Notes under the pieces: model-generated | Seen by the model: only the letters and a program-made list of their open reading frames with translations | Database searches by the model: none | Told to the model about the DNA's origin: nothing | NCBI RefSeq assembly: GCF_001194135.2 | Contig: NC_068982.1 | Coordinates: 128,913,852 to 128,977,851, forward strand | Length of the DNA stretch: 64,000 nt | Direction of reading: 5' to 3' | Source: Octopus bimaculoides | Lineage: Eukaryota | Made by a program: the position numbers and the translations under genes | In this document: positions 14,183 to 63,233 of the stretch, piece after piece | Layout of the letters: the number at the start of each line of letters is the position of its first letter | Position numbering within the stretch: the stretch's first letter is position 1

Positions 14183-14229
<47 letters not shown>

Positions 14230-19453: not shown

Positions 19454-19503
<50 letters not shown>

Positions 19504-26391: not shown

Positions 26392-26678
26392 TTATGACTG
26401 CCATAGACAACAGAAAAAACAGCACCAAAAACAGCAACCAAAACTTAAGAGCCACGCCATGAATCGTATGAACATCATAACCATAATCATGGCCAAGAGG
26501 AAGGTCTGCATGCTGGCATCCCCAACATTTGTGGGTTCCCCACCTTCTGATGGAGCTGCTTCAGTTGTTTCTTTCTTGGTTGTTGACTCAGTTACTGTTT
26601 CTACTTTCTGTTCCGTGATTATTGTAGTTGTTTCAGTTCTTTCAAGCAATGGCTTCACTTCTGCCACGGGGAGTGGTT
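26392..26678 (-). CDS. Titin-like terminal exon O: T/E-rich linker, hydrophobic segment and Cys cluster, stop TAA
   Basis: Long pyrimidine tract plus tacag|AA CCA CTC; phase 1; 2+95 codons to TAA at 26394..26392; no further Ig-like exon seen downstream. Confidence 0.8.
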
Positions 26679-26935
26679 CTGTAAAGGAAAGAAAAGCAAA
26701 AAAAAAAAATGCAAAGAAATTATTTTGTGAAAAATAGTGTTAAAAAACCTAAAACTATATATTTGTTTTAGGCACAGGTATGACTGTGTGATTAAGAAGC
26801 TTGCTTCCCCAATCTTGTATACTTGAATTCAGTCTCATTGTGCAGCACTTAGGACAAGTGTCTTCTGCTATAACCTTGGGCCCATCAAAGCCTTGTAAAT
26901 GGAAATGGAAAAGAAGCCTGTCATGCATGTGTGTG

Positions 26936-26979
<44 letters not shown>

Positions 26980-26983
<4 letters not shown>

Positions 26984-27400
26984 TGATCATCCTGAGAAAC
27001 TCCATTTTAATTCCTTCCAACATCACAATAAGTGCTTTATCATTTGTATGATGTGGAAAATATTCCAACAACACTGCCCAAATGATGTTAGCATCCATTT
27101 TAAAATTCACCCAAGGCTTGGTCCCCATGTTATTCGTTCTCTACAAAAGTCATGCTCATGTCACATCACAACACTAAGACAGAATTATTTCACCTCAGTG
27201 GGCCCTGCTCTCTTTAACATCATCCCAAAACACATAAGAAAAGAAAAGCATCCCCTAATATTTAAACAGTTCCTGGACAAATATTGCCAATGAATTCCAG
27301 ATAAACCACCAACTCTTGGATATATCTCTGCAAACAATAACTCTCTAACTGAATGGGCTATGGTTCCAAAAGAATGACTGATATGAAACATCTTTAAATT
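26980..27400 (+). mobile_element. CR1/L2-group LINE ORF2 C-terminus
   Basis: MWKIFQQHCPND...PRLGP...VGPALFNIIPKHIR...FKQFLDK pattern. Confidence 0.65.
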
Positions 27401-27768
27401 TTTCAAGGTTAGACATAGCCTGGGCCAATGCTGGCCAAAACTTATCTATGTATAAATATTTGTGTATATGTGTGTGCATGATGTGTTATGCATATACTTG
27501 TCTAAACACCACATGATGTTTTAAATGGGCATAATCAGTTTCCAGTCTTCTGTGTAAAACTTGTCAAGCTATGGGAAAATAACATCTTGCCTGGAAACAG
27601 TGAAGATTGGCAACAGAAAGGGTATCTTGCCATAGAAAATTTGCCTCAACAAATTCCATCTGTGTCATACAAGCATGGAAAAGTGGATGTTAACTGATGA
27701 TATATATATAAGATTTTGTCTCTAAAAAATTTATGATGTCCTACATATATAGAACACATCTACATTTT

Positions 27769-27852
<84 letters not shown>

Positions 27853-41720: not shown

Positions 41721-42053
41721 AATTGAATTTATTATAACTAAAATGACAACCACATTTCTTGTATACTAGAGTGATTTTAATCTGATAGATAAGTGAAAGT
41801 CTGAATTTCTCAACTCTTTTTTTTAATGACCTTGTAGTCACTTGGTACTGCTATAGCAATTATTAACATACAATATTTTCTACAAGGCAGTTTTGTTGTA
41901 TATAGAAAAGGCATTATTTTCTGAATTGTAACATATTTGTACTATAATGTCATTTCCAAAGACATGAATATATAAAGCTTTATCTCTAAGAAAATGAAGT
42001 TGTTCTGTTATGTGTGTGTATGCATATATAATATAATATATACATGCAAATAT

Positions 42054-42109
<56 letters not shown>

Positions 42110-43070
42110 GCGTAAATATGTATGTATACATGTGCATATATGTAAGTACATGTGTGTATACACACACTTTGGTACTTCGTGTTTCTAAATATAATTTGTG
42201 GGGCAGGTATAAGATATCTAGTACATATACAGTATACTGTTTGAAGAAACTTATCACTTATATCAATATGATCATTGCTATGTTCTGTTTTATTACCACT
42301 ATTATTATTAGTCATTATACACAAATGTTATGAAGCAAGAGATAAGCTTCTGATAAGTCAGATGTATAATGTGGATTCAATTCCAGATTAAGGCCATTTT
42401 CTTTTATAAAGGACAATAGTGTCAAGAAGAAGAAACCAATACATGAGGTTCAATTTCTCCCCAGGATTGATTTAAACATTTCACCTCTCAAGAATTTGAT
42501 AAACTAAATAATGGGCTTGTGTTGAGATTGATTCAATCCATTGAACCTCTTCCTTAAAAATTTGTGCCATTGTGTCCATGTAATGAATTGCCATTGCTGG
42601 TGTGTATTGACAAGCAAGGGATAAAACAAGTAAGGATCTACTATATGGGGGTGAGTTTCAGGTGAAGTCATTTCATTAATACTGCTAAAGCCGTATCATA
42701 ACCTTTTCCATTTCTATGATATAGTGTTTGAATTTCAAGTTATAAAAATATCATAATTACATTTAGGGAGGGGGTGATGTTATTAAGATATAATTATTGT
42801 TATTATTATTACTATCATTGTTATTATTTTCAGCTAATTGCATGACAATTATAAAATATATTCTTAAAATTTATGAAGTAGTTTTTGATTATTCAATGTT
42901 CTTATGTATTCCCTGATCAGAGAATGTTCTGCAAGTGAAAATATTTTGAGACACCAGATGAGACTTTATAACTATTTTATGTGATTACCTATAAAGAATT
43001 ACAAGAAATTATTTTGGCAAATATGGTTCATTCACAAAGAATAGAAATAATATAAAGCATTGGTACTTAC

Positions 43071-46000
43071 ACAATACAGTAATGTAAGCTGATGAAGTCA
43101 CTGTGCCAAATTCATTAGTTGCAATAACAGAATATAAACCTTGATCTTCAGGAAACACTTCTTCAACGATGTATTCAGAACGATAACCTTCTTGTCTGAT
43201 ATGAACGCCTGGTGAAGGAGCAAGTTCGACTTGATTCAAATACCATTTCACTTCTGGCATAGGTGTTCCACTGACAAATACTTCCATATGGAGAACATGA
43301 TTTTCAACAACGGTAATATCTTTTAAGCTGACTTCAAATGAAGGCATCTTACTTTCTTCCACAGTTTCTGAAATTACTTCAGTTACAAGGTTTTCAACAA
43401 ATGTTTCCAAAATCTCAGGTACCTCTTCATATTGAGCTTGCAAAGTTTCAATTGGCATATCTTTAGCTATAGCTGTTTCAGTCGATGGAAGTGTGACTTC
43501 AGTCAAATTTGGTTGTTCAAAAGCTTCTACAACAGAGCGAGTAGTGGTTTCAGTGATTGGTTGTGTTTTCACGGATTGAGTATCCAACTCAACACCAATA
43601 ACACTCAAGTTCATTGTATCTTGTTGTTTCACATTATCAATTACAGATGGTTCAAGTAATTCTTCAGTGACATCTGCCTTACTTTCAGAAGGAGCTAAGG
43701 GAGCACAGACATTACTTAGAGGTGATACCTCTCTTTCATCTGTTTGCTTTTCAACTTCACGTGTTAACTCATATGTTTTAAGTTCCTCAACAACTTCTTC
43801 AAGTGGCACTGTTTGAGTAAGGAAGGCATCAGATGGTTTATATTTCACATCTAAATCTTGTACACTAGAAGGTTTTTCCATACTTTCAGTTTTATTTTCC
43901 TCCAGTTGCTTGACTTCAGGAATTTCAAATATCTCTTCAAGAACAACACTCTTTGCTGTTTTAGGAGAAATATGACCAGTAGTCTCTTCAGGAGCTGTCA
44001 CTTCCTCAACAACTGGTTGAGATGAAGTTTCTTCATCCAATGATATTATTGAAGATGATTCAGTAAATTCTTCTAGTGTAACAGATTTGCTCATGATTGG
44101 CATTGATTTTTCAGCCATTTCTTTTACTACTTTCATTTCAGCACTACTAAGTTTTTGCTCCACTTTTTCAGCAACATTTACAACTTCTGGCACTTCAATT
44201 ATAGATTCATCAGGTGCAGCTTGAGTTTCCCTTTCTACTCTCTGTTCATACTGTATTTGGAAGCTGGTTACACCTTCACTCTTCAAAGTCTCTACAGGAG
44301 CTTCTTCAAGATCCATTGTAGTTGCATGTTCTGTCATTTCCTCTAAAGCAAAAGCTTTTGCTGAAGTAGGATATGTTTTCTCAGGTTTGGTTGTAACTTG
44401 CTTAATTTCTTGAGTACTAGGCTTATATTCTGTTTTTTCTGGAAGATTCAATATCTCTGGGTGTTCTATCAATTCTATTTCTACAGCTGCTTTACTTTCA
44501 ACAGGGAGATTTTGCATGTATTGTTCACGTATGGATGAAACTTCATCAGGAACAGTTTTTTCTTCTACTTCTTCTTGAACATCACTTGCAGTTGCCTCGT
44601 CAATAAGTTCTTGCATAGCAACAGTTTTAGCAGCAGTTGGTAAGTGTTTCTCAATAGTTTCAGTAATAACCTTATCAATTTCTTGAACAGTTGTCTTTTC
44701 TTCAACACTTTCACTGATACTAAATACATCTGGATGCTCAATAGCAACAGTTTCAATATCAACTTTAGTTTCTTTCGGTAAAAGTTGATCTGTTTCATGA
44801 ACAATAGAAACAATTTCCTGTCCTAAGGTTGTTTCCTGATCTAGTTCCTTAACATGTGTTACAACATTTTCAGGAACATCTTCTGAAAGGAGTGTTGATT
44901 TAGAAATAACAGGCGAATCAATTGCAGATGTTTCAGCAATTACTTGTACTTCAGAAGAAGTTGTTTGTTCTTGAACTTTACTATCAATATCAAATACCTC
45001 TGGCTGCTCAACTCTTTCCAGTCCAACAGCTACTATACTTTCTTTGGCATGTTTCTCTTCAACTGTACGAACATCCAAAGTTATTTCTTCCATTTCAGTT
45101 GTTTCTTCGGGAAGTTCATGTAATTGTGTCACTACAGATTCTTCTGTTAGTTCTTTCATAACAACAGACTTAGCAACTGTTGGTTGTTGTTTCTCAACTT
45201 CAAAAGTAACACCAGGAATACTTGCAACATTTGTTTGTTCTTCAACTTTGCCATCAATAGCAAAAACTTCAGGTTGTTCAAAACTTTCCATTTCCACAGA
45301 TACTTTAGTTTCTTTGGCATATTTCTCTTCAACCTTATGGATATCCAAAGTGATTTCTTGTACATCAGTTGTTTCTTCAGGAAATTCTTGCAACTCTGTC
45401 ACAACTGATCCTTCAGTGACCTCCTTGATAACAGCAGACTTAGCGACTGTTGGTTGTTGTTTTTCAGCCTCTTTGGTAACAGATACTATTTTCTGAATAT
45501 GTGTTTGTTCTTGAACTTTACCATCAATACTTACAACTTCTGGTTGCTCTAGACTTTCCATTTCAACAAGTACTTTACTTTCCTTGGCATGTTTCTCTTC
45601 AACTTTATGGATATCCAGAGTGATTTCTTCTATGTCAGTTGTTGCTTCTGGAAGTTCATGTAACTCAGTAACTATAGATTCTTCAGTGACTTCTTTCATA
45701 GTGACAGATTTTGCAACTGTTGGTTGTCGTTTTTCAGCTTCTTTGGTAACTCCAGGTACACTTTCAATGGTTGTTTGTTCTTCGGTACTGCTAACAATAT
45801 GAAATACTTGTGGTTGATCAACACTCACCGTTTCAAGAGATACTTTGCTTTCTTCTGCAAGCAGTTGTTCAACTTTCTCTTCAACTTGAACAATATCCCT
45901 TGTTACAGGTGTCTCTATTTTCTGTTCAAAGTCAAATATTTGAGGTTGCTCCAAGTCTTCAACCTTTTCAACAACTTTCGTTTCAGTGGCAAATCCTGCT

Positions 46001-46451
46001 TCATGTTGCTGTGAAACAGAAATGACTGATTCAGATTTGACTTGTTCTTCTGAAACTGACTGCAATTCACTCAACTGACTTTGATCTGGGATTTGTATCT
46101 GGGAAGCTGCTCTAGCACTGATTGGTGATTCTATGTCAGCTTTTTGAATACTATCTTTAATTATTTGTGATGTGACCTGGAACTCAGCAATTTGCTTCTG
46201 ACTAATATCAGTAGTTGATTCTGCTTCACCAGTCAGAACCATCTCCACGGTTTTAGCAGTGTGATATTGCTTTTCAACTACACTAGTTCCTGGCAATTCA
46301 GTAGAAACTTCAGCAACTGAAGTCTCTTCTTGAATCAATTTCTTAACTTCTTCATAAGACAATTGCTTCAATTCAGTTTCTTCCAACACTGGTCTTGGAG
46401 ATGGAGCTTCCTGTGATGAAGCTTCTTCACTATCAGGAATATATTCATATG
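43071..46451 (-). CDS. Titin-like giant exon L (3381 nt): E/V/T-rich 90-aa modules plus terminal Ig9
   Basis: tgcag|CA TAT GAA...GTA TTG T|gtaagt; phase 1 to 1; 1126 uninterrupted codons; EEVFPEDQGLYSVIATNEFG. Confidence 0.95.
44000..45760 (-). repeat. Coding 270-bp (90-aa) module, 3 conserved plus several degenerate copies
   Basis: Anchor 'actgttggttgt' at 45176, 45446 and 45716; diverged P...(A/S)K...E copies continue toward 44000. Confidence 0.85.
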
Positions 46452-48559
46452 CTGCAATATTGAAAATAAAGAGATTAGACTTATGAACTCATTTTTACCT
46501 ACATATACTGAAACTATGAAGTTTGTAATTTTTCACCAGCTAATGATTAATCAATCAATTATTTGTACAGCTAATTAAGAAAATTTCTGTAAAATTACAA
46601 CTTTAAAATACAAAATATATAAATAGATAAATAAATAAATAATTAAATTATTCATTTTCAGTTACACATTTTTGTTGTTGTTTCATATTGAAATAAAATT
46701 CATAAGACATTCCAAAAGCTTACTAATCAACATAGAGATAAAATTTACAATGCAAGTTAATAGATGAGAAGCTGTTCATTTTGTCATGCAAAAAAAAAAA
46801 ATTATGATTAAACATCAAGGATGAATAATGAATGAGCAAAAAACAAAAATAGTAGCTGAGTGATTAAATCACAAATGAAAACTATACAATGAAAGCTCAA
46901 AGAAATATTAAAAGAAATTTGATAAAATTTATATGTATAGTAATGTATTCTATACCACTTTATTTCTTTTTTTTAATAAGTTTATAAACTCAGTTATTTA
47001 AGAAATTTGTAAGCAGTTCATAAACATAATTTACCATTAAAATGAAATTATTCTATCACTTGTAAGCATTAACAGTAGTTTTCATTAAATTTTTACAGTT
47101 ACATAATTTGTAAAATCAATAAATTTTGTTTTGCTTATGTTTTCTTTTCCATGAAAGCTTCTTTTTAATTAATAATTTCTAAGTTTCTATTTCTATTCAC
47201 TACATTCTCTTCAGATGTAGATTTTCATGAGATTTCATGTTGAGATTCTCTTTGAAGTAATTACAAAACCAGACACAGAAGCTTGGTGCAGGCTCCTGCT
47301 GGCTAACTCCTATCAAACCGTCCAACCCATGCCAGAATGGAAGAAGGATATTAAACGATAATGATGATAAGGATGATTATGAAATATCAACTGCATTGGC
47401 TTAAAGTTTAACATGACAGATTAAACTTTATTTTCAATTAATACATCCATGTATGCATACTCAATACACAATATACATTTCATATTTATTCTAAAATATT
47501 TATGTTATCTACTTTGCTTTAACCATTCTAATTATTCAATTTTATTTGTAAACTACATGGGGAAGAAAAACAATGACAAAGTCACCACTAAACATTTCAT
47601 TGTTGATTTGTGGTATATGAGTGTGTACCATATTGTGAATGTGTGTGTGTGTTTATGCATGCATGTGCACATTCATGCAAATATCTACATATGTACTAAG
47701 TCACCAAGATATATAGATCAGAAAGAGAACAATTTTGTTTCACTGACATTCACAAAAGAAAAGGACTGAAAATATGTGAGATGAGGAATTTGTCTACTAT
47801 AATAATGGGCATTGAAACTCAGTGTCATTACAAATTATGATTTAACATTGTTTTCATCATGTTATAAATGTTGTAAGCAAGAATGATTGACTATTGATGA
47901 AAAAGATAAATATTTCTTAGAATTAATAGTAACACAGATACTTTGTTTCACACCTCAAGATAATAAATATTTAAAAAGTAGACGGCTTCAAATATTTAAA
48001 GGAAAGATTAGATGAGAAGCTCAGTGTTTCAGAGTGATAAAAGAGATACTTTTAAAATTTTATCATCGTATCATTTGCATTATTTCTTAACACAAGCATT
48101 TAATTTATCTTTCAGGTATTCATTTCACTGATTAGACATATTTGCACTTGAAAGTAAATCTAACATTTTGCAGATATGGTATAGCTTGTTGTGGCTGAAG
48201 ATTAAAATTAAAGTTTAAATGCAAGATCTTAAATGTAATTTATTTTTTGGGGGGAGGAGGGGATAACAACAAGACTTTGAGATCACTATTGCAAGTAGAA
48301 CCACATATTACAAGAATTATCACAAGTTCCTTGATACCATAACCCTGAAGTATGAAGACAAGTAAACTAGAAGAGATGCAAGGCACCATCTAAAAATGAA
48401 TGTCCATCTAGTTTTAAGAATAGCAAAGAGGAGGACCCAGTAAAGTGGAAGATATGCTTTATGTGGAATTAGAATGTATAAATGAAATTAGGGGAAGTTA
48501 AACATTAGAGATTAGAAGGCCATATTTCATAGAAATTGGGAGATGTGTATGAAAGACAT

Positions 48560-48930
48560 GTCTTCTCATTTGCTGAATCTGGAGGAAGGACTAGTGCCCA
48601 TGGTCCTTGTAGACCCTTAATGTTCCTCTAGGTCAGTGGGAAAGATATGAACAGGGAAGAAATTCCAGAAAGCTGATGCCTTGGAAAGGAATGACAGAGC
48701 ATAATAATTAGAGGAGACCCTGGAGGCACAAGGATGGGGAGGGGTGTTATCACAAGGGTGATGGAAAGAGGAAAGGCGAGCGGGTTGGGAATATCTGAGT
48801 AGAAATGGTATAAACACAGTCAGCTCCAAAGAACAGAAGCCGTTATAGTAGAAACTGAAAAAGCAGAAAGAGGATACCGTACACCAATTGGTCAGGGCTA
48901 GAGCACATCTGTGAAAGCCTGCTTTTTATT
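48560..48930 (-). mobile_element. CR1/L2-group LINE C-terminal remnant
   Basis: ORF 48617..48829: ELTVFIP...HP...YALSFLSKASAFWNFFPVHIFP. Confidence 0.65.
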
Positions 48931-50164
48931 TTTAGTGGGATATTTTCTCCAGACACTTATTGGCTAAAAAATATCTTTGTTTTTAAAGAATAACCAATAT
49001 TCTAGTGAGCCATTAGAAGAAGGAGACTAATGTGAAGAATAATTTCAGTAAGAAGGAGAGTAAATGTCCTCAAGACATAAAAACAAGTGTAAAAAAACAC
49101 ATGATGATATTTTAGCTGAGTAGAAAAATGATAGGATAGTAGGATACTTAACTAGATTTGAGAGGTAAGATTTGAAGTAAGTAATGAGTACTATTAATGG
49201 AATACTTTGCAGCTTGCACCTACTTCCAAACTAAATTCTAAGAAATATTTGCACTCAGTACTCTAGAAGGAAAGATAGTGATTAAATCTGAACGAGTGCA
49301 TATGCCAGCCTTGAAGTAAATGCAACTGAGCTATGTTAACTAGTTTCTTTTTGTTCACTATCATAACTCATCTGATCGCTTAATAAGATTACAAAATTAA
49401 ATATACATATAAACTTTATTTGTATTCTTTGTTGTGTAAGATCAGTTACACAATTCTTCATTAGTTTTCATTGCAGCAAGTGAAACTAAGGTAAAAGTAT
49501 CAGTTTTCTATGATTGATTTTGTGAACCAAAAACTCTTAGCAGTACAACATTCAAAAGAGCTATAAACTGTTAAACATGACTACGACCTGAATTTAAATT
49601 AAATCCCTAAATAAATGAAAGCTTGTAATATTAAGAAAAACTTTTAGTTTGAGGAGTTTTTAAGAGCATTCCATTTAATTAATTTTTTTAAGCATGAGAT
49701 TTAATTTATTTTACATTATTTCATGCACAGACATAGAAATTAACAAAGCTTCAATATTTAATTACATAATGACAATGAAATAAAAATGCCTGTAAAGAAA
49801 TAAATGTTAGTAAAAATGAATGCAACAGAATTGTTTACTTACACTGACGAATAATTGTGGTTAATAGATGACAGATGATAAATGATGCTAATAAGAGATG
49901 CGAAACTTTTGAAAATCCTTTTAAATGTAATAAATAAAAAGATTTCAAATCTAAATATTTATACTAAGAACATGTAACTTTTCGAGGCAAATACTCAAGC
50001 AAATACTCAACATGATCATGGCTGTCAATAGCAGAAGCATAATAATATGTTGTAGTTTCATTAGCAGTTTTATGCATTATGCTTCTAACGATTAGAACAA
50101 GACAAGTAACGAAGGCAGAAACTAAATCTATGATGCTTCTAAACCTGCAACAATTATCACTTAC

Positions 50165-51929
50165 ATTCTATTTCCAAATACGCTCTACTAACAGCAGTAC
50201 CTAGAGCATTGGTTGCTTCACATTTATATTCACCAGCATCTTGTGGGAATACTTCAGAAATCAGTAAAGAACAACTTCCAGTTTCCTTATTGTATATAGA
50301 TTTGAAATCTTGGTTTTCGGAAATAGGTACTTCCTCGTGGTACCACACTATTTCTGGCATTGGCTGACCATCGATTTCACAGTAAAATTTTACTTCTTCA
50401 CCATCCATAACTTTCAATGATGTCAAATGCCAAGTAAATATTGGTGCTTTACCAGCTTTCTCAACAACTTCTTTTTCAACTGGTTTCTCTTTCTCTGTTA
50501 TTTCTTCCTTTATGACCTCTTCAACTACTGGCTGTTCCTCTTTTTTCAAAACAATTGTTTCACGAGAAACTGAAACCATATCTACTGTTTGCGCAGGTAT
50601 TTCAGCTACTTCTACAACTACTGGTTTATCAATTTGTGCATGTATTTCGACTACTTCTACAACTGGTGCATCAGTTTGAGCAGGTATTTCGACAATTTCT
50701 ACAACTGGTACATCAGTTTGTGCAGGCATTTCAACAACTTCAACTGGTACATCAGTTTGTGTAGGTATTTCAACTGCTTCTACAGCTGGTACATCAGTTT
50801 GTGTAGGTATTTCGACTGCTTCTCCAACTAGCACATCAGCTTGTGCAAGTATTTCAACTGCTTTTACAACTGGTACATCAGTTTGTGCAGGTATTTCTAC
50901 AACTTCAAGTGGTACATCAGTTTGTGCAGGTATTTCAACTGCTTCTGNNNNNNNNNNNNNNNNNNNNNNNNNNNNNNNNNNNNNNNNNNNNNNNNNNNNN
51001 NNNNNNNNNNNNNNNNNNNNNNNNNNNNNNNNNNNNNNNNNNNNNNNNTACAACTGGTACATCAGTTTGTGCAGGTATTTCTACAACTTCAAGTGGTACA
51101 TCAGTTTGTGCAGGTATTTCAACTGCTTCTACAGCTGGTACATCAGTTTGTGTAGGTATTTCAACTGCTTCTCCAACTAGCACATCAGCTTGTGCAAGTA
51201 TTTCAACTGCTTTTACAACTGGTACATCAGTTTGTGCAGGTATTTCTACAACTTCAAGTGGTACATCAGTTTGTGCAGGTATTTCAACTGCTTCTGAAAC
51301 TGGTGCATCAACTGTATCAGGGAGCAGAACTACTTGAACCTCAGGTGACTTCATTTTCATAACATGCTCCTTAACTTCAACTTCAATTCTTTGAGGTTGA
51401 AGAACTGGCTGTATTTCTTTCTGTGAAAGAACTGCAGGTTCACTTTCAGGTTGTTCTTTATGAAGTATTTCAATTGTTTCTTTATGGATGTTTTCACGTT
51501 CAATAACTACATCGTCCTTAGCAGGAATTTCTTCGGAAGTTATGTGAGTTGATTCATGAATTTCAGTTCTAGTTTCAGTCACGGGTTCACTAACTTGGAA
51601 TCGTAACTCTACAGGTGTAGATTTTTCTTTTTGATCTACTGTTAAAGTAGTAGTATGTTTTTCAGTAGCTTTTACATCAGCTGGAACTTCTTCAGTCTGT
51701 TCAAAATAAGAAGTTGTTGTAGATATTGTTCTAATTTCCTCTGTCTGAGTAACTTCCTCAGGTGCATCATAAAATAGGTCAGTTTCAGATTCTCTTCGAT
51801 CATCACATTGAAACTCTACATGTTCTTGATAGACAGTTTCATCAGGTAATTCTACTATTTGCGGCTGATCAACTATAATGGTTTGTTTATGTGTTTCATC
51901 AGATTCAATAGCTTCACTACCAGATGAAG
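50165..51929 (-). CDS. Titin-like exon K: acidic linker, 13-14-aa repeats, terminal Ig8; interrupted by an N gap at 50948..51048
   Basis: tcag|CT TCA TCT GGT...ATA GAA T|gtaagt; phase 1 to 1; open frames on both sides of the gap; the 1-nt frame offset is attributable to the gap estimate. Confidence 0.9.
50590..51300 (-). repeat. Coding 39-42-bp repeat (EAVEIPAQTDVPVV-like) with a 165-bp higher-order unit
   Basis: Repeated acatcagtttgtgcaggtatttc; higher-order anchors 'gcttct' ending at 51130 and 51295. Confidence 0.9.
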
Positions 51930-53326
51930 CTGAAATGAATTAAAACGCAAAAATATTTAAATGTATGTAAATTAATGTTTGACCACCACAAGAAACTAAC
52001 AGTGATTATCTTTCGCAGATAAATGGATATGATTAGCAAATGACGAAATATGAAATAAATGATTAGTAAATATAAACACAGATGGAAAGTAATTTGAAAA
52101 TATTCACACAAGAGAATTCGTGAAAAAATGGAATGTTATTTAACGTATTTATTGATTTGATTGTGTCATTATCAAGTTATCTTAAATAGAGGTATGTTAG
52201 TATAAATTGCAATTCTTGCAATTTAAAAAAATATTTTTGGTCAATCCAATTAAAATATATCATTTGATTATTTATCTTCTTGACATAGACGTTTTTTTCA
52301 CATAAACCTCATGGATTAGAGATTTCACTTACAGTAAGTTTACTAACATAAGCAAAGCAGCTATTTTAACTCAGTTTTGAAAATCTAAGTCTTCCACTCA
52401 TTCTGTTGATAAATTCAGTACAAAGTCAGTGGGATACAAATGATACACTTCAGGCTATTAAAACACTTATATCCAATAGCTTTTTCAGTATCCTTTATCT
52501 ATTTCCCATTTGTAAATAGTAAAAATTCCAAGAGAGCCTAAAACAGATTATTAAAATTCAAAGATTGCTGCAGTCTAATGACTAAAACAAGTAAAAGATT
52601 AAAGATTTAAAAAAGCATAATATTATGGAAACACACGCACTGTCTAATCATATATTTCCTTGATTATAAGAACATTTATATAAAACATTTTTCTAAACAT
52701 TTTCAAAGTATATTTTCTGTCTTTTCATAATTTTAACTTACTTGTATTCTATCTTTATATTTATGAATGAAGCATTACTAAGTCACAGAAATAGTTGAGC
52801 AAACAGATTAACCCTTTTGCATTTAAACTGGCCCTTTATCCAGCCCTAATATTATAACTGTTTTATGTTCAAACTAGTTGGATCCAACCTCTCACACCTA
52901 TCTTACAACATCATTTTAAAAATAAACTATCACATCATTGAAATCTTGAAGCTACAAGATAACACACTATTACTACAAAATGATGTGAATAAATTAAGCA
53001 TTACATTTGGCAGAGTAATCTGAAGGCTAAAGGGTTAAATGCTTCACTGTTTTCTTTGTGTTCTAAATTCAGCTCTCAACAGAATCAACTTTACCTTTCA
53101 TCCCAGATGACAATAAAATAAATCCTGGTAATACGGAAGTCAATTGGATCAACTACACCTCTAATCCAATGAAAAGTGGGTTTATATCTAATGAAATAAT
53201 TCAATAATGATAATGGGAATTCAATAATGATAATGAATTAATAAAATTTGTTAGTATATTAAATAAAATAAATGGAAAATGACACCAAAACAATTTTATA
53301 AAGATCTTTGTAAAAAGTAAACTTAC

Positions 53327-53638
53327 ATGTGACTGTCAGTTTGCATGTTGTTATTGTCTCACCATACTCATTTGATGCAGAACAAGTGTATTCTCCTTCA
53401 TCTTCAGGGAATACTTCCACAATAATGAGAATACTTTCTTTTCGTTCATAATCTACAGTAATTTGTATATCATTGGTGGATGTTATAACTTTACCATCAT
53501 AAAACCATGTTATTTTTGGCAAAGGTTGGCCAGTGAAACGCACTCTAAATTCTGCTCTATCGCCATCATGAACAGTATATGGCTGAAGTAATTCTGTGAA
53601 TTCAGGAGCTGCTGGCTCAGTAAGTGGTGCTTCAATTT
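53327..53638 (-). CDS. Titin-like exon J: Ig7 (APEFTELLQPYTVHDGDRAEFRVRFTGQP...EVFPEDEGEYTCSASNEYG)
   Basis: ag|AA ATT...ACA T|gtaagt; 312 nt, phase 1 to 1. Confidence 0.94.
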
Positions 53639-53984
53639 CTAAATTAAATACATATAAATTGAAACTCAGTAAAATCTTATTTAAAAAGATGTACTTTAAT
53701 CAAAATATTTTCATAACTTTTATGGTTTCCTGTGTAAATATTACTCTATTATTATGCTTCATTATTAACTCATATAACATCATAGTGAGTTTATATTGAA
53801 ATTATAATTATAAACTATACTTACAAAGCAAAGGAATTTTATATGATGTCAATTCTAAAATGCTGCAACTGGGAACTATTATGTTATCATTAAATTTATC
53901 AGATAACCAGTAGAATTTAAAGATTTAATCTCAAACATTTGCAACTTTTAACTTTATGTGCTAAAAAATATACATCATACTTAC

Positions 53985-54199
53985 GTTTCATCACATTGAT
54001 AGATGCTCTACTTATTGATACACCTTCTTTATTTTCCATACGGCAAATGTATTCTCCAGTATCTTCATATGTTGCATTTACAATCAATAATATTGATGTA
54101 TTATGTTCAATAAACATTTTCCTGTTAGGTGTCGGTCGAACCTCAACCTCATTGATATACCAGGAGACATTGGGTTCTCCAGTCAACTGGCATATTAGT
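53985..54199 (-). CDS. Titin-like exon I: core of Ig6 (LICQLTGEPNVSWYIN...DTGEYICRMENKEG)
   Basis: tcag|A CTA...AAA C|gtaagt; 215 nt, phase 2 to 1. Confidence 0.92.
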
Positions 54200-54963
54200 C
54201 TGAGATAAAAATAGAAAGAATCATATTGAAATTAAATTAAATAGATTTAAAGGTGTATAAAAAGACAAAGATAGTTACTTTATTAACAAAATTTGTAAAA
54301 AGATTAGCTCTTTAATGCTTAGTTCTATAAATAAAACTTAGCTCTATAAATAGAATTAAATCTACAATGAAATGAAATTTAAAATATCTATTTATTTATT
54401 AAATTGAGACTTTTCAAAGAATACATTTCTATATATTAAATATAAATATAAACAAATATGATACTATATGTGATATATAAAGAAAGAAAAAAAAGCAACT
54501 GCCTAACCTATAGAAGTCTAATCTTAATCCACCTCATCATCATCATTTTAGTGTATTTCTATTAACTCAGCTATATATTTGCTCAGAAATTTAATATATA
54601 TGTGTGATCTTTGTAAGCAAAAGAGGGATGCAAATAGTGCTGTTTGTTTCCAGTTAGTCATGAAAATGTGTCCAGTCTGTTCATTTTTCAGTAAACTAGA
54701 AAACTATTATCTTGTTTATAAACAGGTGAAGATTGGAGCCAGAAAGGACATCCAGCCATAGAAAACTCTGCCCTAATGTAGTCTCATCTGACCAATGATG
54801 ATTATGATGATGATTTCAACATTTCTAAACAACTTTCATTTTACAATTACTTAAGAAAAAATGGTTCCTTATTATTTATTGAAACTTTTCTGGTTCACAA
54901 TTCTAATAACCAAAATTAGAATAAAATGATGAACATTTTCTATGTATAATTTAGGATAATTAC

Positions 54964-55117
54964 CTGACAGGTTTTCCATGATAAACCTCAGTTGGTTCAA
55001 TATAATGAGGTGACATCTGAATAGAAGTAATGTAATGTTCATCGACTAATTTGATGCTTTCATCAAGAGGAATGGTTGTCATAGATTTTGTTGTGGTCTC
55101 AGTTGTTGTTATTGAAG
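54964..55117 (-). CDS. Titin-like exon H: Thr-rich linker plus start of Ig6 (...PHYIEPTEVYHGKPVR)
   Basis: tcag|CT TCA...GTC AG|gtaatt; 154 nt, phase 1 to 2. Confidence 0.85.
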
Positions 55118-56454
55118 CTGAAAAATATTTAAAGGTAAATATATAGCAATGCAAACGGGCTGGTTTTTGCATATTTGTGTATAAACAAATTAAATGCAAA
55201 TATTTACTTGATCAGTTTATTCAAAGGCTGACTGAGCAAAGATACTAAGTGAAGAGTACAGTAATTTATCTGGGATTATTTCATCTAATTAAAAAAATGC
55301 ATTATTAATTTAATATCAGTTTATTTCACTGTGATAAAGCTGCTAACTTATGGGATAGGGGAGGATTCAGTTAGATCAGACCAAGTAAGTCTGGTACTAA
55401 ACAATCTCAGATGTACTGAAGGTAGTCAACCCTTACAAGATTTCAAATCAAATCATAGAAGATGAACTTAAATACAGACAAATTATTTAATCTATTGCTC
55501 AACCATTTCTGCTAACTGACCTATTTTGTTATTTACTTGATACTAAAGTCACTAGAATTCATTTATAGTGAAAAGTCAAAAACCAAATGTTGTTGGTCGT
55601 AGTAACTGTTATGATATATCAGCTTAAGAGTCATGATAAGAGTACCAGACTAAACATCTTCCAGAAATTAGTTTGGTCTCAATTTCTGGGTTTCAATTTG
55701 ATTGGGCTAAACTTAACTTGTTGTTTTTCTCGAGTTGATATAACAGGGTACTAATCAAACACAGGTGACTAAAAACTATACAATTCCCCTTTAAATTTCT
55801 GGCCTTGTACCACTGAGAAAAATTATAATAGTATATTGTCAACAAATTTCTAAACATCTCATGTGATTAAAACTATACAACTTCCCTTCAAATTTGTGGC
55901 CTTGTACCAAGATGAAAATTCATAATAAGATATTAACTACCAATTTCTAAAAATCCTTTTAAATTAATTCATTTTATAAAATATTTCTATTTTTTAAAAA
56001 AATAGAAAGATACTGATTAAAGCCAAAATCTCAGTTTTGTTGAATTTTAGATTTAAAAATTTATCAAATTAATAGATGCCCTAGAAACAGTATTAGATTA
56101 AAATAATGACATGTATAATGTTCATAACATATATATACAACTGTGGAAGGGTGCCAGTTGTAATATTTTGTCTCAGAGAAACTTCTCTCTCAGAGATGAT
56201 TCTCTGAACAAAACATTAATGCTGTTGCTTTACCAGGTGTGTACATACACTATGAATATTTACACACAGCATTATGAAAAGAAATCTGTTGAAATTATCA
56301 ACTAAATTTAACTCAGTTCTTGTTTCATGAAAATAATCTTATTATTCTTATTCTTTTAGCATTATTGATATCATCCTAATATGATCAAAATAATATTAAA
56401 TGAAGGTGAGAATTTAAAATGTATCCTATAAAACAAAATAACTATATTACTCAC

Positions 56455-57153
56455 TTTCAACAATAACAGTTGTGGAAGTAACAGATTCTCCATAAATGTT
56501 TCTGGCATGGCAAGTATATTCTCCTGCATCTTCTGGATAGACTTCAGTAATAATCAACTTACATCTACCAGTTTCTATTTCAAATGTTATCTGGAAATCA
56601 TTATTTGGTACAATCTCAATTGAGTCTTTATACCAAGTAATTTTGGGTTCAGGATAAGCATTCATTCTGCAAGTCAATACAACTTGAGAACCATCTTGAA
56701 CAGTTTGTGGTTGCAAAGGTTCCACAAATTCAGGAGGAATAGCAGCTGGTTTGGCTTTCTGATCTTTCTTCTGAACAGGAATAATGACTTCTTCTTTCTT
56801 TGGTTCATGAACTGTCAGTCGAGCAGATGTAGCTGCTTGTCCATATTGATTGATAGCCATGCAAACATAATCTCCTCGATCTTCTGGAAGAGCTTCCACG
56901 ATATGGAGACAAATATCTCCTGTCTCTGGGTTGTATGAAATGACATATTCATCATTGTTATCAATATTAGTCCCATTATGGAACCAAGAAACATGAGGAA
57001 CTGGTTTTCCAACAACTTTGCATATCATTTTTATTTCTTGGCCATCGACCACATCCATTGTTTCTAAGTCTTTTATAAAGTTTGGTGGCATAAAGTCCTC
57101 TACAGGAGGTTCCTCTTCTGTTTCAGGAGGTGGTGACATTTCTGCAGCAGGTT
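56455..57153 (-). CDS. Titin-like exon G: two I-set domains, Ig4 and Ig5
   Basis: tacag|AA CCT...GAA A|gtgagt; 699 nt, phase 1 to 1; two PP.F...W...(V/L)(Y)PED.G.Y.C.A.N.YG motifs. Confidence 0.95.
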
Positions 57154-57824
57154 CTGTAAGATAAGCAACATAACATTAGTTATAGCTAAACATTTTTCTC
57201 TTTTATTTCTATGTAATTGGTAATGATTGCATTAAATAAGGCATTTTGAATATTTATTCAAGTATAAAAGTAGATCACTTTCCAATGTCTTATTTACAAT
57301 AGTAAAGTCAGATTTTTAATAGTAAATGTCAATGGTTTAGCATGAGATGTGTGGGGTATGTGGACCACGCATAGCAGCCACTTTGGATGGAGGAGGCAAA
57401 ACATACATTGAAGGTATGTTACATTTAAAGAAGAGCATAACCAATGTGGCTACCACACTGGGCATGCACTAGGTAGCATGCTATGCTACAGTTGAATATT
57501 AAACAAGTGTTGACAAGTACAAGCATGACTGCCAGAAATTTGATTTGCAATCAAATGGTTTCAAGTTCAGTCCCACTTTAGGAAATTGGGTATTGGTGTT
57601 TCTAACAACAATCCCAGTCAACAAATCATCCACAAGCTCTGTGCTTTCAAAGATGATTGGCATGAAAATTCCCTTACTTTGAAACCAGGTAAGAGTTAAT
57701 GACACAAAGGTCATCGATCTATGGAAACAGTTATATGTATTCCACTAAAACCCATGCTAGCATTCAAAAATGAATGTAAAATATACAATTAAAACCATTG
57801 ATGATATGAAAAGACAAATATTAC

Positions 57825-58042
57825 CTTGGACATATAAGGTAGTACTGCACACAGCTTCACCTAATTCTGAAACTGCTCTGCATGTATATTCACCAGTATC
57901 TTCTGGTCCAACATCAATAATGATCAGCAAACTTTTACCAGATTCGTAAAAGATTTCATAATGTGGAGAAGGCTTGATTTCCATTCCATTGATATACCAA
58001 GTAATCAAAGGAGGGGGATGAGCATCTACTGAACATTCAAGT
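57825..58042 (-). CDS. Titin-like exon F: core of Ig3 (LECSVDAHPPPLITWYING...DTGEYTCRAVSELG)
   Basis: tgcag|A CTT...CAA G|gtaata; 218 nt, phase 2 to 1. Confidence 0.93.
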
Positions 58043-58819
58043 CTGCAAGATAAAATAATGAAAACATATACATATACATTTATATAAATATAAATAAATA
58101 TATATACATATATATTATATATATACACATACCAATACCTACACACACAATTGGAAAGAACTGAGGCTAATTCAGGAAAAGCTTAATACAAGTATTAACA
58201 TGGAATATAAATCTATCTATAATAATAAAATATTATTTTATGATTTTACAAAATAAAAGAAACTAGATTTGAATATTTTTCCTTTTGAGTCTAAACATCA
58301 AGGGCTTACAGTTAATAAGCATAACATGAAATCAGAGCCTTCTAATAGTTAACATCTAATTTAGATATTAGCTTCACATTTTAATTTAAAAGCAAACGTA
58401 AAGAGGGTTATTAGAAAATAAGAAAATGAATGAAAATTATGCTCAGATAGATATGAGTCTATGATGCTTTCAGTTAAAATAAGCAAATCATTTAGGAGGA
58501 AATAATTTGTTTGATTTATTTATCTCATTTTTTTTTTTAATGTTGACAATTTCTAATAGAAATGAAATGGTGTTATACATAACTACCTAAGACTAGAAAT
58601 TTTATTATCTTCATAACGAATAAGTAAAAAAAAATTAACTATACATATATTCTATGCATCTTCTAATCCTTCCAAATACTATGTAGAAATTATTATCTCC
58701 CTTACTCTAAGTGGCCACCAGGAAATGCAATGTGTTCAAGATTAAGATGAAATATCTGCTTATATGTTCAAACTGTAGACTGTTATAAGGAATTAGGTTG
58801 CAGACTAGACCAGTCAATT

Positions 58820-58978
58820 AGATGGACCCCAGTACGCAACTGGTATTTAATTTATCAACCCCAAAAGGATGAAAAGCAAAGTCGACTTCGGCAGAATTTG
58901 AAGTCAGAACATAAAGGCAAACGAAATACTGCTAAGCATTTCGCCTGGCCTACTAATGTTTCTGCCAGCTCCCTGCCT
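58820..58978 (-). mobile_element. tRNA-derived SINE (family of 35068)
   Basis: Reverse-complement match to the 35068 copy. Confidence 0.78.
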
Positions 58979-59036
58979 TTAGACCAGTATAATATTATTA
59001 TTTAAAACAACAGTAAAGGTTTTAGTAAAACTTTAC

Positions 59037-59199
59037 CTTGCAATTCCTCTTTCTCGGACGAACACCTCAGGTTGAATAGGCTCAACAAAAATAGGCCTTA
59101 TTTCCCTGATTTCAGTTGTAATAGTCTTTTCTTCTTTCTCAATCATTTTAATGGTAACGGAATCAGGTTCATCTGGTATTTGCACAACCTTTTGCTTTT
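59037..59199 (-). CDS. Titin-like exon E: linker plus start of Ig3 (...RPIFVEPIQPEVFVRERGIAR)
   Basis: tcag|AA AAG...GCA AG|gtaaag; 163 nt, phase 1 to 2. Confidence 0.9.
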
Positions 59200-59431
59200 C
59201 TGAAAAAAATAAGAAATAACAGTTGCACTTTGTTAGATTCATTGTTGTGAAGTTTTAATTGAGCGTAACAAAAATAAAATACCAACAGCTATTTCAAAGA
59301 AGTGGTAGGCCTCAAGAAAATGACTAAGTATTGTGGCAAAGCATTAAACAGAAGAAAACTCATTTAATCCATACAAACATGGAGAAACAGATGTAATATG
59401 CTACGTATATATATATATATATATATATATG

Positions 59432-59462
<31 letters not shown>

Positions 59463-59849
59463 GTTGTTGTTGCTGTTGTTTTTATCTCTCAGTCGTTGGG
59501 GTTATGCCAGTTCATTCTGTTGGATAGCAAGTCATATCCTGCACTTTTCTGAAGATTCTTGATCCTAACAAACAGGCTGTTCTGAATTCTTACATGTTAG
59601 GAATTTTAAATCATGTTCCACTGCAACTTATAGCATTGTAGTATTTATAGAATAGAATTAGAAATTTATAAATATAAAACAAAAAAAAGTTAACAGTATT
59701 TATGGAGTTGAAAATACTTATTGTCAGTTGTATACTTTTTTTTATTGTTTTATTCTGTAAGATGTATTTTAAGTTTGAAAATATTCCATGTTTTATTATT
59801 ATTATTATTATTATTATGTTTTTGCTTTGTACTTGTACAAGTTGACTCC

Positions 59850-60400: not shown

Positions 60401-60443
60401 CTAATTTTAATGACATTATTACTGAAGTAAAACCAATACTAAC

Positions 60444-60661
60444 CATCAAAAGTAATGGTTGTCCTGCATGTGATTTCACCAAGCTCATTTCCAACTCTCA
60501 GGACATACTCTCCAATATCCTTTTCATCAACATGAATGATGATCAAGACAACAGTATCTCCTTCTTGGAACATCTGGTAATGATCTGATGGTAGGATTTC
60601 AACACCATTGACATACCATTTCACCAATGGTGGTGGATAAGCCTCAACCTGAGCTTCAAGT
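60444..60661 (-). CDS. Titin-like exon D: core of Ig2 (LEAQVEAYPPPLVKWYVNG...DIGEYVLRVGNELG)
   Basis: ag|A CTT...GAT G|gttagt; 218 nt, phase 2 to 1. Confidence 0.93.
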
Positions 60662-63183: not shown

Positions 63184-63233
63184 TCTGTTTCTAATAAAGT
63201 TATTTTTAAAAGAATTGAAGATATTGTACATAC

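What the first reader, a model, noticed from the sequence alone, without database searches (positions are those of the whole stretch)
26392..51929. Candidate system: length-tunable titin-like membrane-contact tether
Inference combining three sequence observations: (i) a C-terminal membrane anchor, (ii) FFAT-type VAP-binding sites roughly 600-3000 aa upstream, and (iii) extensible acidic repeat linkers in individually skippable exons. The molecule could bridge SR/ER to another membrane such as the sarcolemma, or link the myofibril to membranes, with spacing set by splicing. It would merge titin-like elasticity with a junctophilin/obscurin-like role. This is a hypothesis, not a demonstrated function.
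Basis: inference. Interest (0 to 1): 0.8.

Follow-up and report, generated by a model that had tools for sequence, protein, structure and literature searches.

The report
Titin-like muscle gene with membrane-anchor tail
The interval is the 3' end of a giant titin-like muscle gene whose last exon encodes a conserved membrane anchor, so at least one form of this elastic filament protein is probably fastened to an internal membrane, which has not been described for titin-type proteins.

Summary
All three sequence observations hold. On the minus strand lie three giant phase-1/phase-1 exons (A 51929-50165, B 46451-43071, C 40060-36215). Each encodes 460-1190 residues of acidic, internally repeated, probably disordered sequence followed by one titin-type I-set Ig domain. 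After them come a probable 138-nt exon (30580-30443) and a terminal exon (26678-26392) ending in a ~35-residue hydrophobic, Cys/Trp-rich C-terminus.

The gap at 50948-51048 sits inside a 42-nt coding tandem repeat. The repeat register predicts an in-frame join. The other two gaps are intronic.

The tail exon is a real, conserved part of this gene family. Nine related tails were found, with the same phase-1 acceptor. Wherever enough flank is held, the tail lies 4-6 kb downstream of Ig exons on the same strand.

Five FFAT-like motifs occur against 0.2 expected. Similar motifs occur in two distant relatives. VAP binding is untested.

My reading is a tail-anchored elastic titin/sallimus-like isoform linking ER/SR membrane to the myofibril. 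A classical membrane-contact tether is less likely. In other taxa more exons follow the tail and one taxon lacks it, so it may be an alternative 3' end. This is a new variant of a known kind.

The parts
50165..51929 (-). Exon A. Phase 1 in (CAG|CT) and phase 1 out (GAAT|GTAAGT). Encodes an acidic linker with 14-aa tandem repeats, then one I-set Ig domain. Contains the assembly gap 50948-51048.
51757..51777 (-). FFAT-like core LFYDAPE, preceded by the acidic tract RESETD. This is the closest of the five to canonical EFFDAxE.
   Evidence: (strict [FY][FY]D[AC]: 1 seen, 0.007 expected)
50587..51310 (-). 42-nt (14-aa AVEIPAQTDVPxxE) coding tandem array that spans the gap.
43071..46451 (-). Exon B, 3381 nt, phase 1/1. 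Starts YEYIPDSEE. Contains 270-nt (90-aa) acidic repeats at 44961-45854 and ends with one I-set Ig domain (about 43075-43353).
   Evidence: AF2 mean pLDDT 37.5 on the repeats
36215..40060 (-). Exon C, 3846 nt, phase 1/1. Contains 141-nt (47-aa) repeats at 38179-39066 and 168-nt (56-aa) repeats at 36744-37264. Ends with a conserved 'C-type' Ig (EDEGEYKV..EN.AGS..STAYVTVL, about 36219-36494). The donor TTAC|GTAAGT joins in frame to exon D or to the tail.
39813..39887 (-). Pair of FFAT-like cores, TFEECIE (39887-39867) and HFEECYQ (39833-39813), in a unique acidic segment.
37614..37685 (-). Pair of FFAT-like cores, SFEDAAE (37685-37665) and DFKECID (37634-37614), between the two repeat arrays of exon C.
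30443..30580 (-). Probable exon D, 138 nt, phase 1/1 (ctaatttcag|CA ... CCAG|GTAATG). Encodes LSISDTEFETQRAVVSEQEKMEIKQEFHKFEINIDVSSRGAPPKP. Its final G plus AA of the tail exon gives Glu.
   Evidence: similar small acidic exons after the C-type Ig in L002, L007 and L012
26392..26678 (-). Terminal exon. Acceptor is a long pyrimidine tract followed by ttacAG|AACCACTC (phase 1). Encodes an acidic T/E-rich linker, the conserved DASMQ motif, the hydrophobic anchor, and the stop codon TAA at 26394-26392.
26401..26502 (-). Hydrophobic C-terminal anchor FLLAMIMVMMFIRFMAWLLSFGCCFWCCFFCCLW. It reads as a ~21-residue membrane span with one conserved R/K, followed by a Cys/Trp/Phe-rich end.
53262..63859 (-). 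Upstream exons of the same gene, outside the finding. About seven I-set Ig domains are separated by short linkers, which is a kettin/I-band-like arrangement. The gene runs off the window.
   Evidence: colinear with L012

Best explanation
The interval is the 3' part of a giant titin/sallimus-type muscle gene on the minus strand.

After a chain of Ig-linker exons come three giant exons. Each encodes a long acidic, repeat-built, probably disordered spring segment capped by one Ig domain. A small acidic exon follows. A terminal exon then adds a conserved hydrophobic, Cys/Trp-rich C-terminus, making the product a tail-anchored protein.

Inferred mechanism:
- The Ig-linker part binds the myofibril, as in kettin/sallimus and I-band titin.
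- The C-terminus inserts post-translationally into ER/SR membrane. It is a very hydrophobic span with no basic flank.
- The roughly 2700 acidic residues in between act as an entropic spring. The spring keeps the sarcoplasmic reticulum, or another endomembrane, attached to the contractile lattice during large length changes.
- This would be functionally analogous to the obscurin-small ankyrin 1 link of vertebrates.

The five FFAT-like motifs may add VAP-mediated attachment points on the same ER/SR membrane.

What is shown: the gene structure, the reading-frame compatibility, and the conservation and synteny of the tail. What is inferred: the target membrane, elasticity, myofibril binding and VAP binding.
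For: - Exon anatomy and phases.
- Reading frames: C to tail gives CAA (Gln), C to D gives CCA, and D to tail gives GAA (Glu). All are in frame.
- The tail ORF has no Met before SMQ, so it cannot stand alone.
- A profile search of 1.84 billion representative proteins finds nine related tails. They share GW..(D/E)D.SMQ.F, a hydrophobic span, R.LAW and C.W.C.
- The phase-1 acceptor AG|AACCAC is shared by the window, L001 and L003/L005. L007 and the scallop contig L010 are also phase 1.
- In L002, L003-L006 and L007 the tail lies 4.1-5.7 kb downstream of Ig exons on the same strand, with no Ig on the other strand.
- The giant exon upstream in L002 and L007 ends in the same Ig as exon C, and L007 is its best match.
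- L012 is colinear with the window from the Ig-linker-Ig exon through the A-, B-, C- and D-type exons.
- The Ig domains match titin best: 5e-59, 6e-52 and 8e-22, against 1e-35 or weaker for cell-surface Ig proteins.
- Linker composition, charge-hydropathy position and AF2 pLDDT of 37.5 are consistent with disorder.
- The tail region occurs in an assembly of a scallop gill metatranscriptome.
Against: - There is no spliced transcript evidence. The one RNA-derived contig is unspliced.
- In L002 and L007 further Ig and giant repeat exons follow the tail on the same strand.
- L012 has no tail exon in the corresponding 8 kb and runs on into a 2196-residue ORF. The anchored form may therefore be one alternative, possibly minor, isoform.
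- The window lacks the split Ig and the 'EEYYEIEIE' exon that sit before the tail in other taxa, so the cephalopod-type locus is rearranged or incompletely assembled.
- The target membrane is inferred only from general tail-anchor rules (my knowledge).
- The AF2 run used a single sequence, which is weak evidence for disorder.
- The organism was not identified.
Confidence: 0.55

Rival explanations
1. The protein is a two-membrane contact tether. The tail anchor sits in one membrane (sarcolemma, T-tubule, mitochondrion). The FFAT motifs bind VAP on the ER/SR. Alternative splicing of the giant exons sets the gap width.
For: - An anchor plus FFAT-like motifs is the architecture of known VAP tethers such as ACBD5 (my knowledge).
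- Five FFAT-like motifs occur against 0.22 expected.
- ESEEYADAPEVE in L007 has P about 0.01 in shuffles, and EEDIFEDVPEA occurs in L012.
- All giant exons are phase 1/1.
Against: - The anchor looks ER-type: hydropathy above 2 and no basic tail (plus general tail-anchor rules from my knowledge). Anchor and VAP would then be on the same membrane.
- About 1 um of contour length is far beyond contact-site dimensions (inference).
- The exon A ortholog in L012 has no FFAT.
- The L012 motif has Val at position 5.
- The motif pattern was defined post hoc.
- There are no splicing data.
Confidence: 0.15
2. The tail exon is an alternative 3' terminal exon lying in an intron of a still longer gene, like titin Novex-3 or the kettin isoform of Drosophila sallimus. 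The main product skips it, continues into downstream exons beyond the window, and is purely myofibrillar. The anchored form is then a short, possibly tissue-specific isoform. This is compatible with the best explanation but changes its weight.
For: - L002 has an Ig exon 4.3 kb after the tail and a 3676-residue ORF 6.8 kb after it, on the same strand.
- L007 has a linker plus Ig exon 5.7 kb after the tail. It starts DIPDSEE, like exon B.
- L012 has the same upstream exon order but no tail, and runs into a 2196-residue ORF.
- All exons are phase 1, so skipping the tail stays in frame.
Against: - In the window no Ig or other convincing exon lies in the 26 kb downstream of the stop.
- L003 and L004 show none within 10 kb.
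- The downstream exons in L002 and L007 could belong to a tandem paralogous gene.
Confidence: 0.45
3. The FFAT-like motifs are not VAP-binding sites. They are either by-products of acidic, low-complexity sequence or a different short linear motif (acidic-F-x-D/E-A/C-x-E) with another partner.
For: - Four of the five have Glu or Lys instead of an aromatic residue at core position 3, and none has Glu or Asp at position 1 except DFKECID.
- They are not found in the other parts of the giant ORFs of L002 and L007 that are held.
- They are absent from the exon A ortholog of L012.
- The published scoring matrix could not be retrieved, so no standard FFAT score was computed.
Against: - Enrichment is about 20-fold over shuffles.
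- All five keep the positions that matter most in FFAT: aromatic at 2, acidic at 4, Ala or Cys at 5, and an acidic upstream tract.
- One published conventional FFAT matrix scores D and E equally at position 4 (PMC10948934).
- Near-canonical EYADAPE occurs in a distant ortholog.
Confidence: 0.5
4. The tail exon belongs to a separate small gene nested downstream of the titin-like gene, or the protein is an extracellular type I Ig adhesion molecule with a C-terminal transmembrane segment.
For: - No transcript evidence links the exons.
- Automatic gene callers list the tails as small stand-alone ORFs.
Against: - There is no start codon upstream of the anchor in the window ORF.
- The phase-1 acceptor matches the phase-1 donors of all upstream exons and is conserved.
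- Position after Ig exons is constant across taxa.
- The Ig domains are closest to titin.
- There is no cytoplasmic tail after the span.
- Huge acidic PEVK-like linkers are typical of intracellular elastic proteins (my knowledge).
Confidence: 0.05

Closest known systems
Invertebrate titins: Drosophila sallimus/kettin, crayfish I-connectin, C. elegans TTN-1
   Same: - Tandem I-set Ig domains separated by short linkers.
- These are followed by very large exons encoding acidic PEVK-like repeat springs.
- Exons are symmetric in phase.
- Alternative 3' ends are known, such as the kettin isoform.
   Different: - No membrane anchor or FFAT motif is described for any of them, to my knowledge, and none appeared in two literature searches.
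- Here P+E+V+K content is lower (43-48%) and T, I and Q are abundant.
Vertebrate titin Novex-3 isoform
   Same: An alternative terminal exon within the I-band part of the gene gives a short isoform with a special C-terminus that docks to another system (obscurin).
   Different: - Novex-3 has no transmembrane segment.
- Whether the tail exon here is alternative is not shown for the window.
Obscurin-small ankyrin 1 (sAnk1.5) link, and junctophilins
   Same: The proposed function is the same: tying SR membrane to the sarcomere or to another structure through a tail-anchored element.
   Different: - In vertebrates the anchor (sAnk1.5) and the giant Ig protein (obscurin) are separate polypeptides. 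Here they would be one chain.
- There is no sequence similarity of the tail to either. Pfam shows no match at E up to 0.1 apart from one weak, below-cutoff hit to the unrelated family IgaA (E 0.084).
VAP-FFAT tethers with a membrane anchor (ACBD5, PTPIP51, protrudin)
   Same: - FFAT-like motif in an acidic disordered region, plus a membrane anchor in the same protein.
- DFKECID resembles protrudin EFKDAIE, and LFYDAPE resembles OSBP/VPS13-type EFFDAPE (my knowledge).
   Different: - Those proteins are small (300-600 aa) and place the motif within tens of nm of the anchor.
- Here the motifs lie 600-3000 residues away, in a giant elastic protein.
Nesprins (KASH-domain giants)
   Same: Giant cytoskeleton-binding filament with a conserved C-terminal membrane span followed by a short conserved end.
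   Different: - Nesprins use spectrin repeats, not Ig.
- No KASH domain match was found.
- The peptide after the span is about 15 hydrophobic Cys/Trp residues, not a ~30-residue luminal peptide ending in PPPX.

Membership tests
Titin/sallimus-type intracellular giant Ig proteins | Tandem I-set Ig domains most similar to titin-family domains | tested here: met
   - Pfam I-set matches range from 6e-14 to 4e-44.
- The best PDB matches are titin I65-70 and Z1Z2 constructs (5e-59, 6e-52, 8e-22), well ahead of Robo and DSCAM.
- About 10 Ig domains lie on one strand.
Titin/sallimus-type intracellular giant Ig proteins | Long PEVK-like disordered spring segments | tested here: inconclusive
   - P+E+V+K is 43-48%, D+E is 21-23%, and the segments are built of tandem repeats.
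- The B and C linkers fall on the disordered side of the charge-hydropathy plot, and A is borderline.
- AF2 single-sequence pLDDT is 37.5.
- Elasticity itself is not testable here.
Titin/sallimus-type intracellular giant Ig proteins | Fn3 domains, kinase domain, Z-disc/thin-filament binding, sarcomeric location | not testable with these tools
   The window holds only the 3' part of the gene. No Fn3 or kinase domain is seen in it. No expression data are available.
Tail-anchored membrane proteins | Single hydrophobic span within about 40 residues of the C-terminus, with little or nothing after it | tested here: met
   The last 37 residues have GRAVY 1.8 and the best 21-mer scores 2.2. The protein ends in QS. 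The same holds in nine homologues.
Tail-anchored membrane proteins | No N-terminal signal peptide; post-translational insertion | not testable with these tools
   The N-terminus of the gene lies outside the window.
FFAT-motif VAP ligands | Core resembling EFFDAxE: aromatic at position 2, D/E at 4, A/C at 5, with an acidic tract upstream | tested here: met
   Five sites fit (LFYDAPE, TFEECIE, HFEECYQ, SFEDAAE, DFKECID), each with at least 2 acidic residues in the 6 upstream. Expected number is 0.22. Only LFYDAPE has an aromatic residue at position 3. No published FFAT score could be computed because the matrix is not held.
FFAT-motif VAP ligands | Motif conserved in orthologues | tested here: inconclusive
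   - L007 has EYADAPE in the exon C orthologue (P about 0.01).
- L012 has IFEDVPE, with Val at position 5.
- The exon A orthologue in L012 has none.
- No close relatives of the window species were available.
FFAT-motif VAP ligands | [quoted passage not shown] | not testable with these tools
   This needs a binding assay.
Novex-3/kettin-type alternative terminal exon | Terminal exon with stop codon lying upstream of further exons of the same gene | tested here: inconclusive
   - Further exons follow the tail in L002 and L007, and L012 has downstream exons without a tail.
- None is seen in 26 kb of the window or in 10 kb of L003/L004.
KASH-domain nesprins | KASH domain (Pfam PF10541): span plus a ~30-residue luminal peptide ending in PPPX | tested here: not met
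   No Pfam match at E up to 0.1 apart from one weak, below-cutoff hit to the unrelated family IgaA (E 0.084). The end is CLWQS, directly after a hydrophobic Cys/Trp stretch.

The most novel reading that the evidence does not exclude
A tail-anchored isoform of an invertebrate titin is conserved across distant (probably molluscan) lineages. It fuses in one polypeptide the sarcomere-binding Ig chain, a micrometre-scale acidic spring and an ER/SR membrane anchor, and it carries functional VAP-binding FFAT motifs. This would be a direct elastic coupler between the contractile lattice and the reticulum. It would replace the two-protein obscurin-ankyrin solution of vertebrates. It would also be the first case of VAP recruitment by a titin-type protein.
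Probability: 0.25. Interest if true: 0.8.

Novelty: new variant of a known kind. Interest (0 to 1): 0.6.

Why it matters
How the sarcoplasmic reticulum is kept in register with sarcomeres is understood in vertebrates through obscurin and small ankyrin 1. It is largely open in invertebrates, especially in soft-bodied animals whose muscles undergo very large length changes.

A titin-type spring that ends in its own membrane anchor would give a simple, testable answer. It would also add a new class of cargo to the tail-anchor insertion pathways, namely a multi-thousand-residue filament.

If the FFAT-like motifs bind VAP, the VAP interactome would extend to the myofibrillar cytoskeleton.

The conserved tail motif (GW..DD.SMQ.F-span-R.LAW..C.W.C) is a ready search handle. 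It can be used to annotate this exon, which automatic gene callers currently list only as small anonymous ORFs.

Tried and rejected
- A word-indexed protein search with the whole of exon C returned nothing at E<=1e-5. The threshold I set was too strict, and the disordered sequence evolves fast.
- A profile of the C-type Ig did not return the giant ORFs of L002 and L007. It returned only short Ig ORFs.
- I could not walk further along the foreign contigs. The full 1622-, 2181-, 3676- and 2196-residue ORFs were therefore never seen.
- The published FFAT position-weight matrix could not be obtained. It is in supplements that are not held, and the key papers are not in the library. I used an explicit, post hoc regular expression with shuffles instead.
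- I looked in the window for the split Ig and the 'EEYYEIEIE' exon that precede the tail in other taxa. Neither was found.
- I looked for a tail exon in L012. None was found.
- L008, a closer relative with 63% identity in the C-type Ig, has a retrotransposon upstream of that exon and no tail within 10 kb. It gave no help on FFAT conservation.
- Poly(A) signals downstream of the stop are uninformative in this AT-rich sequence. The first ATTAAA is at +763 and the first AATAAA at +1694.
- Two literature searches for a membrane-anchored titin-like protein found nothing relevant.
- I rejected the separate-small-gene reading and the extracellular Ig-CAM reading. The reasons are given under the rival explanations.


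Full report
**What the window is**

The sequence is AT-rich (about 31% G+C) and full of microsatellites. It has seven N runs. It is eukaryotic. I could not identify the organism.

All long stop-free stretches with protein-like content lie on the minus strand, from 63859 down to 26395. Pfam finds I-set immunoglobulin domains in them. An Ig profile built from the window's own domains finds about ten Ig domains, all on the minus strand. None lies below 36200.

**Gene anatomy inside the finding**

| Exon | Coordinates (minus strand) | Acceptor / donor | Content |
|---|---|---|---|
| A | 51929-50165 | TTTCAG\|CT ... GAAT\|GTAAGT | acidic linker, 14-aa repeats, one Ig; holds the gap |
| B | 46451-43071 | TTGCAG\|CA ... 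TTGT\|GTAAGT | acidic linker, 90-aa repeats, one Ig |
| C | 40060-36215 | TTTCAG\|CT ... TTAC\|GTAAGT | acidic linker, 47-aa and 56-aa repeats, one Ig |
| D (probable) | 30580-30443 | ctaatttcag\|CA ... CCAG\|GTAATG | 46 acidic codons |
| Tail | 26678-26392 | ttacAG\|AACCACTC after a 25-nt pyrimidine tract | acidic linker, hydrophobic anchor, stop |

- All of these exons begin and end in phase 1.
- Each giant exon encodes a long acidic linker followed by exactly one Ig domain.
- A codon-usage scan found exon D as an additional small exon.
- The joins A-B, B-C, A-C, C-D, D-tail and C-tail are all in frame.
- A-tail and B-tail give TAA at the junction.

**The gaps**

- The gap 50948-51048 is inside exon A. 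It lies within a 42-nt tandem array that TRF reports on both sides with the same unit.
- Both flanks are open and encode the same AVEIPAQTDVPxxE repeat.
- With 101 N the frames differ. Sliding the repeat unit across the gap gives its best match when the missing length is 1 mod 42, which restores the frame.
- The exon is therefore very probably continuous, with an unknown number of repeats.
- The gaps at 40906-40915 and 31765-32166 are in introns, with no coding signal next to them. The larger one could still hide a small exon.

**The linkers**

- The linkers are 21-23% D+E and 43-48% P+E+V+K. Net charge is about -150 per giant exon.
- They are built of tandem units of 14, 90, 47 and 56 residues.
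- The B and C linkers fall on the disordered side of the charge-hydropathy boundary. The A linker is borderline.
- An AlphaFold2 run on three 90-residue repeats gave mean pLDDT 37.5. It used a single sequence, so it is weak evidence.
- This is consistent with a PEVK-like entropic spring, but elasticity is inferred.
- The disordered part is about 2700 residues, or about 1 um of contour length. That is the scale of a sarcomere, not of a 10-30 nm membrane contact (inference).

**The anchor**

The terminal exon ends ...NVGDASMQTFLLAMIMVMMFIRFMAWLLSFGCCFWCCFFCCLWQS*.

Evidence that it is a conserved family:
- A word-indexed search found one homologue, P0001, with 52% identity overall and a nearly identical hydrophobic end. 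Its contig shows the same AG|AACCACTC acceptor. Similarity collapses right after the stop.
- A two-sequence profile searched against 1.84 billion representative proteins found eight further convincing tails, making nine with P0001.
- These tails share GW, (D/E)D.SMQ.F, a ~21-residue span with one conserved R/K (Pro in one lineage), LAW, and a C.W.C-rich end.
- All are anonymous short ORFs on unannotated contigs.

Evidence that it belongs to this gene:
- Wherever enough flank is held (L002, L003-L006, L007), a split I-set Ig lies 4.1-5.7 kb upstream on the same strand. No Ig lies on the opposite strand.
- In L002 and L007 a giant acidic ORF further upstream ends in the same Ig as exon C (EDEGEY..EN.AGS..STAY.TVLRK). 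L007's copy is the best match of exon C in the window.
- The tail acceptor is phase 1 in every taxon examined.
- The window ORF has no Met before SMQ.
- One tail-bearing contig comes from an assembly of a scallop gill metatranscriptome. It is unspliced.

I conclude that the tail exon belongs to the titin-like gene.

The span is very hydrophobic, is preceded by acidic residues, and has no basic residues after it. By the general rules for tail-anchored proteins (my knowledge) this points to ER/SR rather than to mitochondria or peroxisomes.

**The FFAT-like motifs**

| Core | Residues from the C-terminus |
|---|---|
| LFYDAPE | 3052 |
| TFEECIE | 1364 |
| HFEECYQ | 1346 |
| SFEDAAE | 630 |
| DFKECID | 613 |

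- All five lie in unique acidic segments, not in the repeats.
- A pattern requiring aromatic at position 2, D/E at 4, A/C at 5, a polar or acidic residue at 7, and at least two acidic residues upstream occurs five times. The expectation is 0.22, and none of 3000 shuffles reached five.
- The strict F/Y-F/Y-D-A/C core occurs once against 0.007 expected.
- The patterns were written after seeing the motifs, so these figures are optimistic.
- I could not obtain the published scoring matrix. One paper states that a conventional FFAT matrix scores D and E equally at position 4 (PMC10948934).

In other taxa:
- L007's exon C orthologue contains ESEEYADAPEVE, with P about 0.01 in shuffles.
- L012's B-type giant exon contains EREEDIFEDVPEA, with Val at position 5.
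- The exon A orthologue of L012 has no such motif.

An acidic-F/Y-x-D-A/V-A/P-E motif therefore recurs in this gene family, and FFAT is its best known match. VAP binding remains a hypothesis.

**Is the tail the only end of the gene?**

- In L002 an Ig exon and a 3676-residue repeat ORF follow the tail within 7 kb on the same strand.
- In L007 a linker plus Ig exon starting DIPDSEE follows.
- L012 is colinear with the window from the Ig-linker-Ig exon through the A-, B-, C- and D-type exons, the split Ig and a small 'EEYYEIEIE' exon. It has no tail in the next 8 kb and runs into a 2196-residue ORF.
- The window shows nothing convincing in the 26 kb after the stop. L003 and L004 show nothing in 10 kb.
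- The tail may therefore be an alternative terminal exon of Novex-3/kettin type. I put this at about even odds.
- The window also lacks the split Ig and the EEYYEIEIE exon seen before the tail elsewhere.

**Interpretation**

The best-supported reading is a tail-anchored isoform of a titin/sallimus-like protein that ties an endomembrane, most likely ER/SR, to the myofibril through a long acidic spring. FFAT-like motifs are possible extra VAP attachment points on the same membrane.

Three parts of the model are not supported by what can be computed: a bridge between two different membranes, contact-site dimensions, and splicing-tuned length.

I found no paper describing a membrane-anchored titin-type protein. 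The tail matches no Pfam family; the only hit at E up to 0.1 is a weak, below-cutoff one to the unrelated family IgaA. I rate it a new variant of a known kind.

Noticed in passing
window 53262-63859 (minus strand): Upstream exons of the same gene hold about seven I-set Ig domains, some split over two exons. They are separated by ~30-residue linkers, as in kettin or I-band titin. The gene continues beyond the right end of the window.
   Followed up: partly
window 2272-2867; also 9040-9102 and 32257-32319: Overlapping open frames on both strands occur at 2272-2855. One reads ...GRGRPRKTWAEVVRQDLRTLGLTEAMTTDRDLWKWAV, which looks like the C-terminal end of a LINE-type reverse-transcriptase ORF. 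A ~60-nt piece of it recurs at two other places, one of them just beside the gap at 31765-32166.
   Followed up: no
L002 4313-5517, L003 4339-5877, L007 4771-5924, L012 11798-12428: In other taxa an extra Ig domain, split over two exons (..TWYQ | DG..DDEAEY.C.A.NE.G...LFVES), sits between the D-type exon and the tail. It is not detectable in the window.
   Followed up: yes
L002 7889-8149, L010 709-981, L012 13654-13902: A small conserved exon-like ORF with the motif EE(Y/F)Y(E/Q)(I/V)EIE..W lies 1-2 kb upstream of the tail. In L012 it lies downstream of the split Ig. No counterpart exists in the window.
   Followed up: partly
L012 (ENA ERZ25084518 ctg235918), 12428-20330: This taxon has the same exon order as the window but no tail exon. 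A 2196-residue ORF of 47-residue acidic repeats follows instead.
   Followed up: yes
L002 17386-20550: A 3676-residue ORF downstream of the tail is made of ~95-residue repeats (..VSTADVKSKLVTQVREQLQLIKPEDIKPV..). They look helical rather than PEVK-like. It is unclear whether it belongs to the same gene or to a neighbour.
   Followed up: no
L010 (Logan assembly of SRR23580857): This tail-bearing contig comes from a scallop (Argopecten irradians) gill metatranscriptome (PMC10989825). The locus is therefore represented in RNA-derived data, but the contig carries intron-like flanks and is unspliced.
   Followed up: partly
L008 5400-9660: In a closer relative (63% identity in the C-type Ig) a retrotransposon with RT and integrase ORFs lies directly upstream of the Ig exon, where the window has the long acidic part of exon C.
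   Followed up: no
proteins P0023-P0034, P0046: The Ig that ends exon C (..EDEGEY.VKAVNEAG.C.STAYLTVLRK) is strikingly well conserved in many anonymous contigs from several sources, far more so than the neighbouring Ig domains. That suggests a specific binding role next to the anchor.
   Followed up: no
window 12293-12980, 13829-14156, 18561-18793, 20408-20417: Four further assembly gaps lie downstream of the gene's stop codon. If the gene continues past the tail exon, exons could be hidden there.
   Followed up: no
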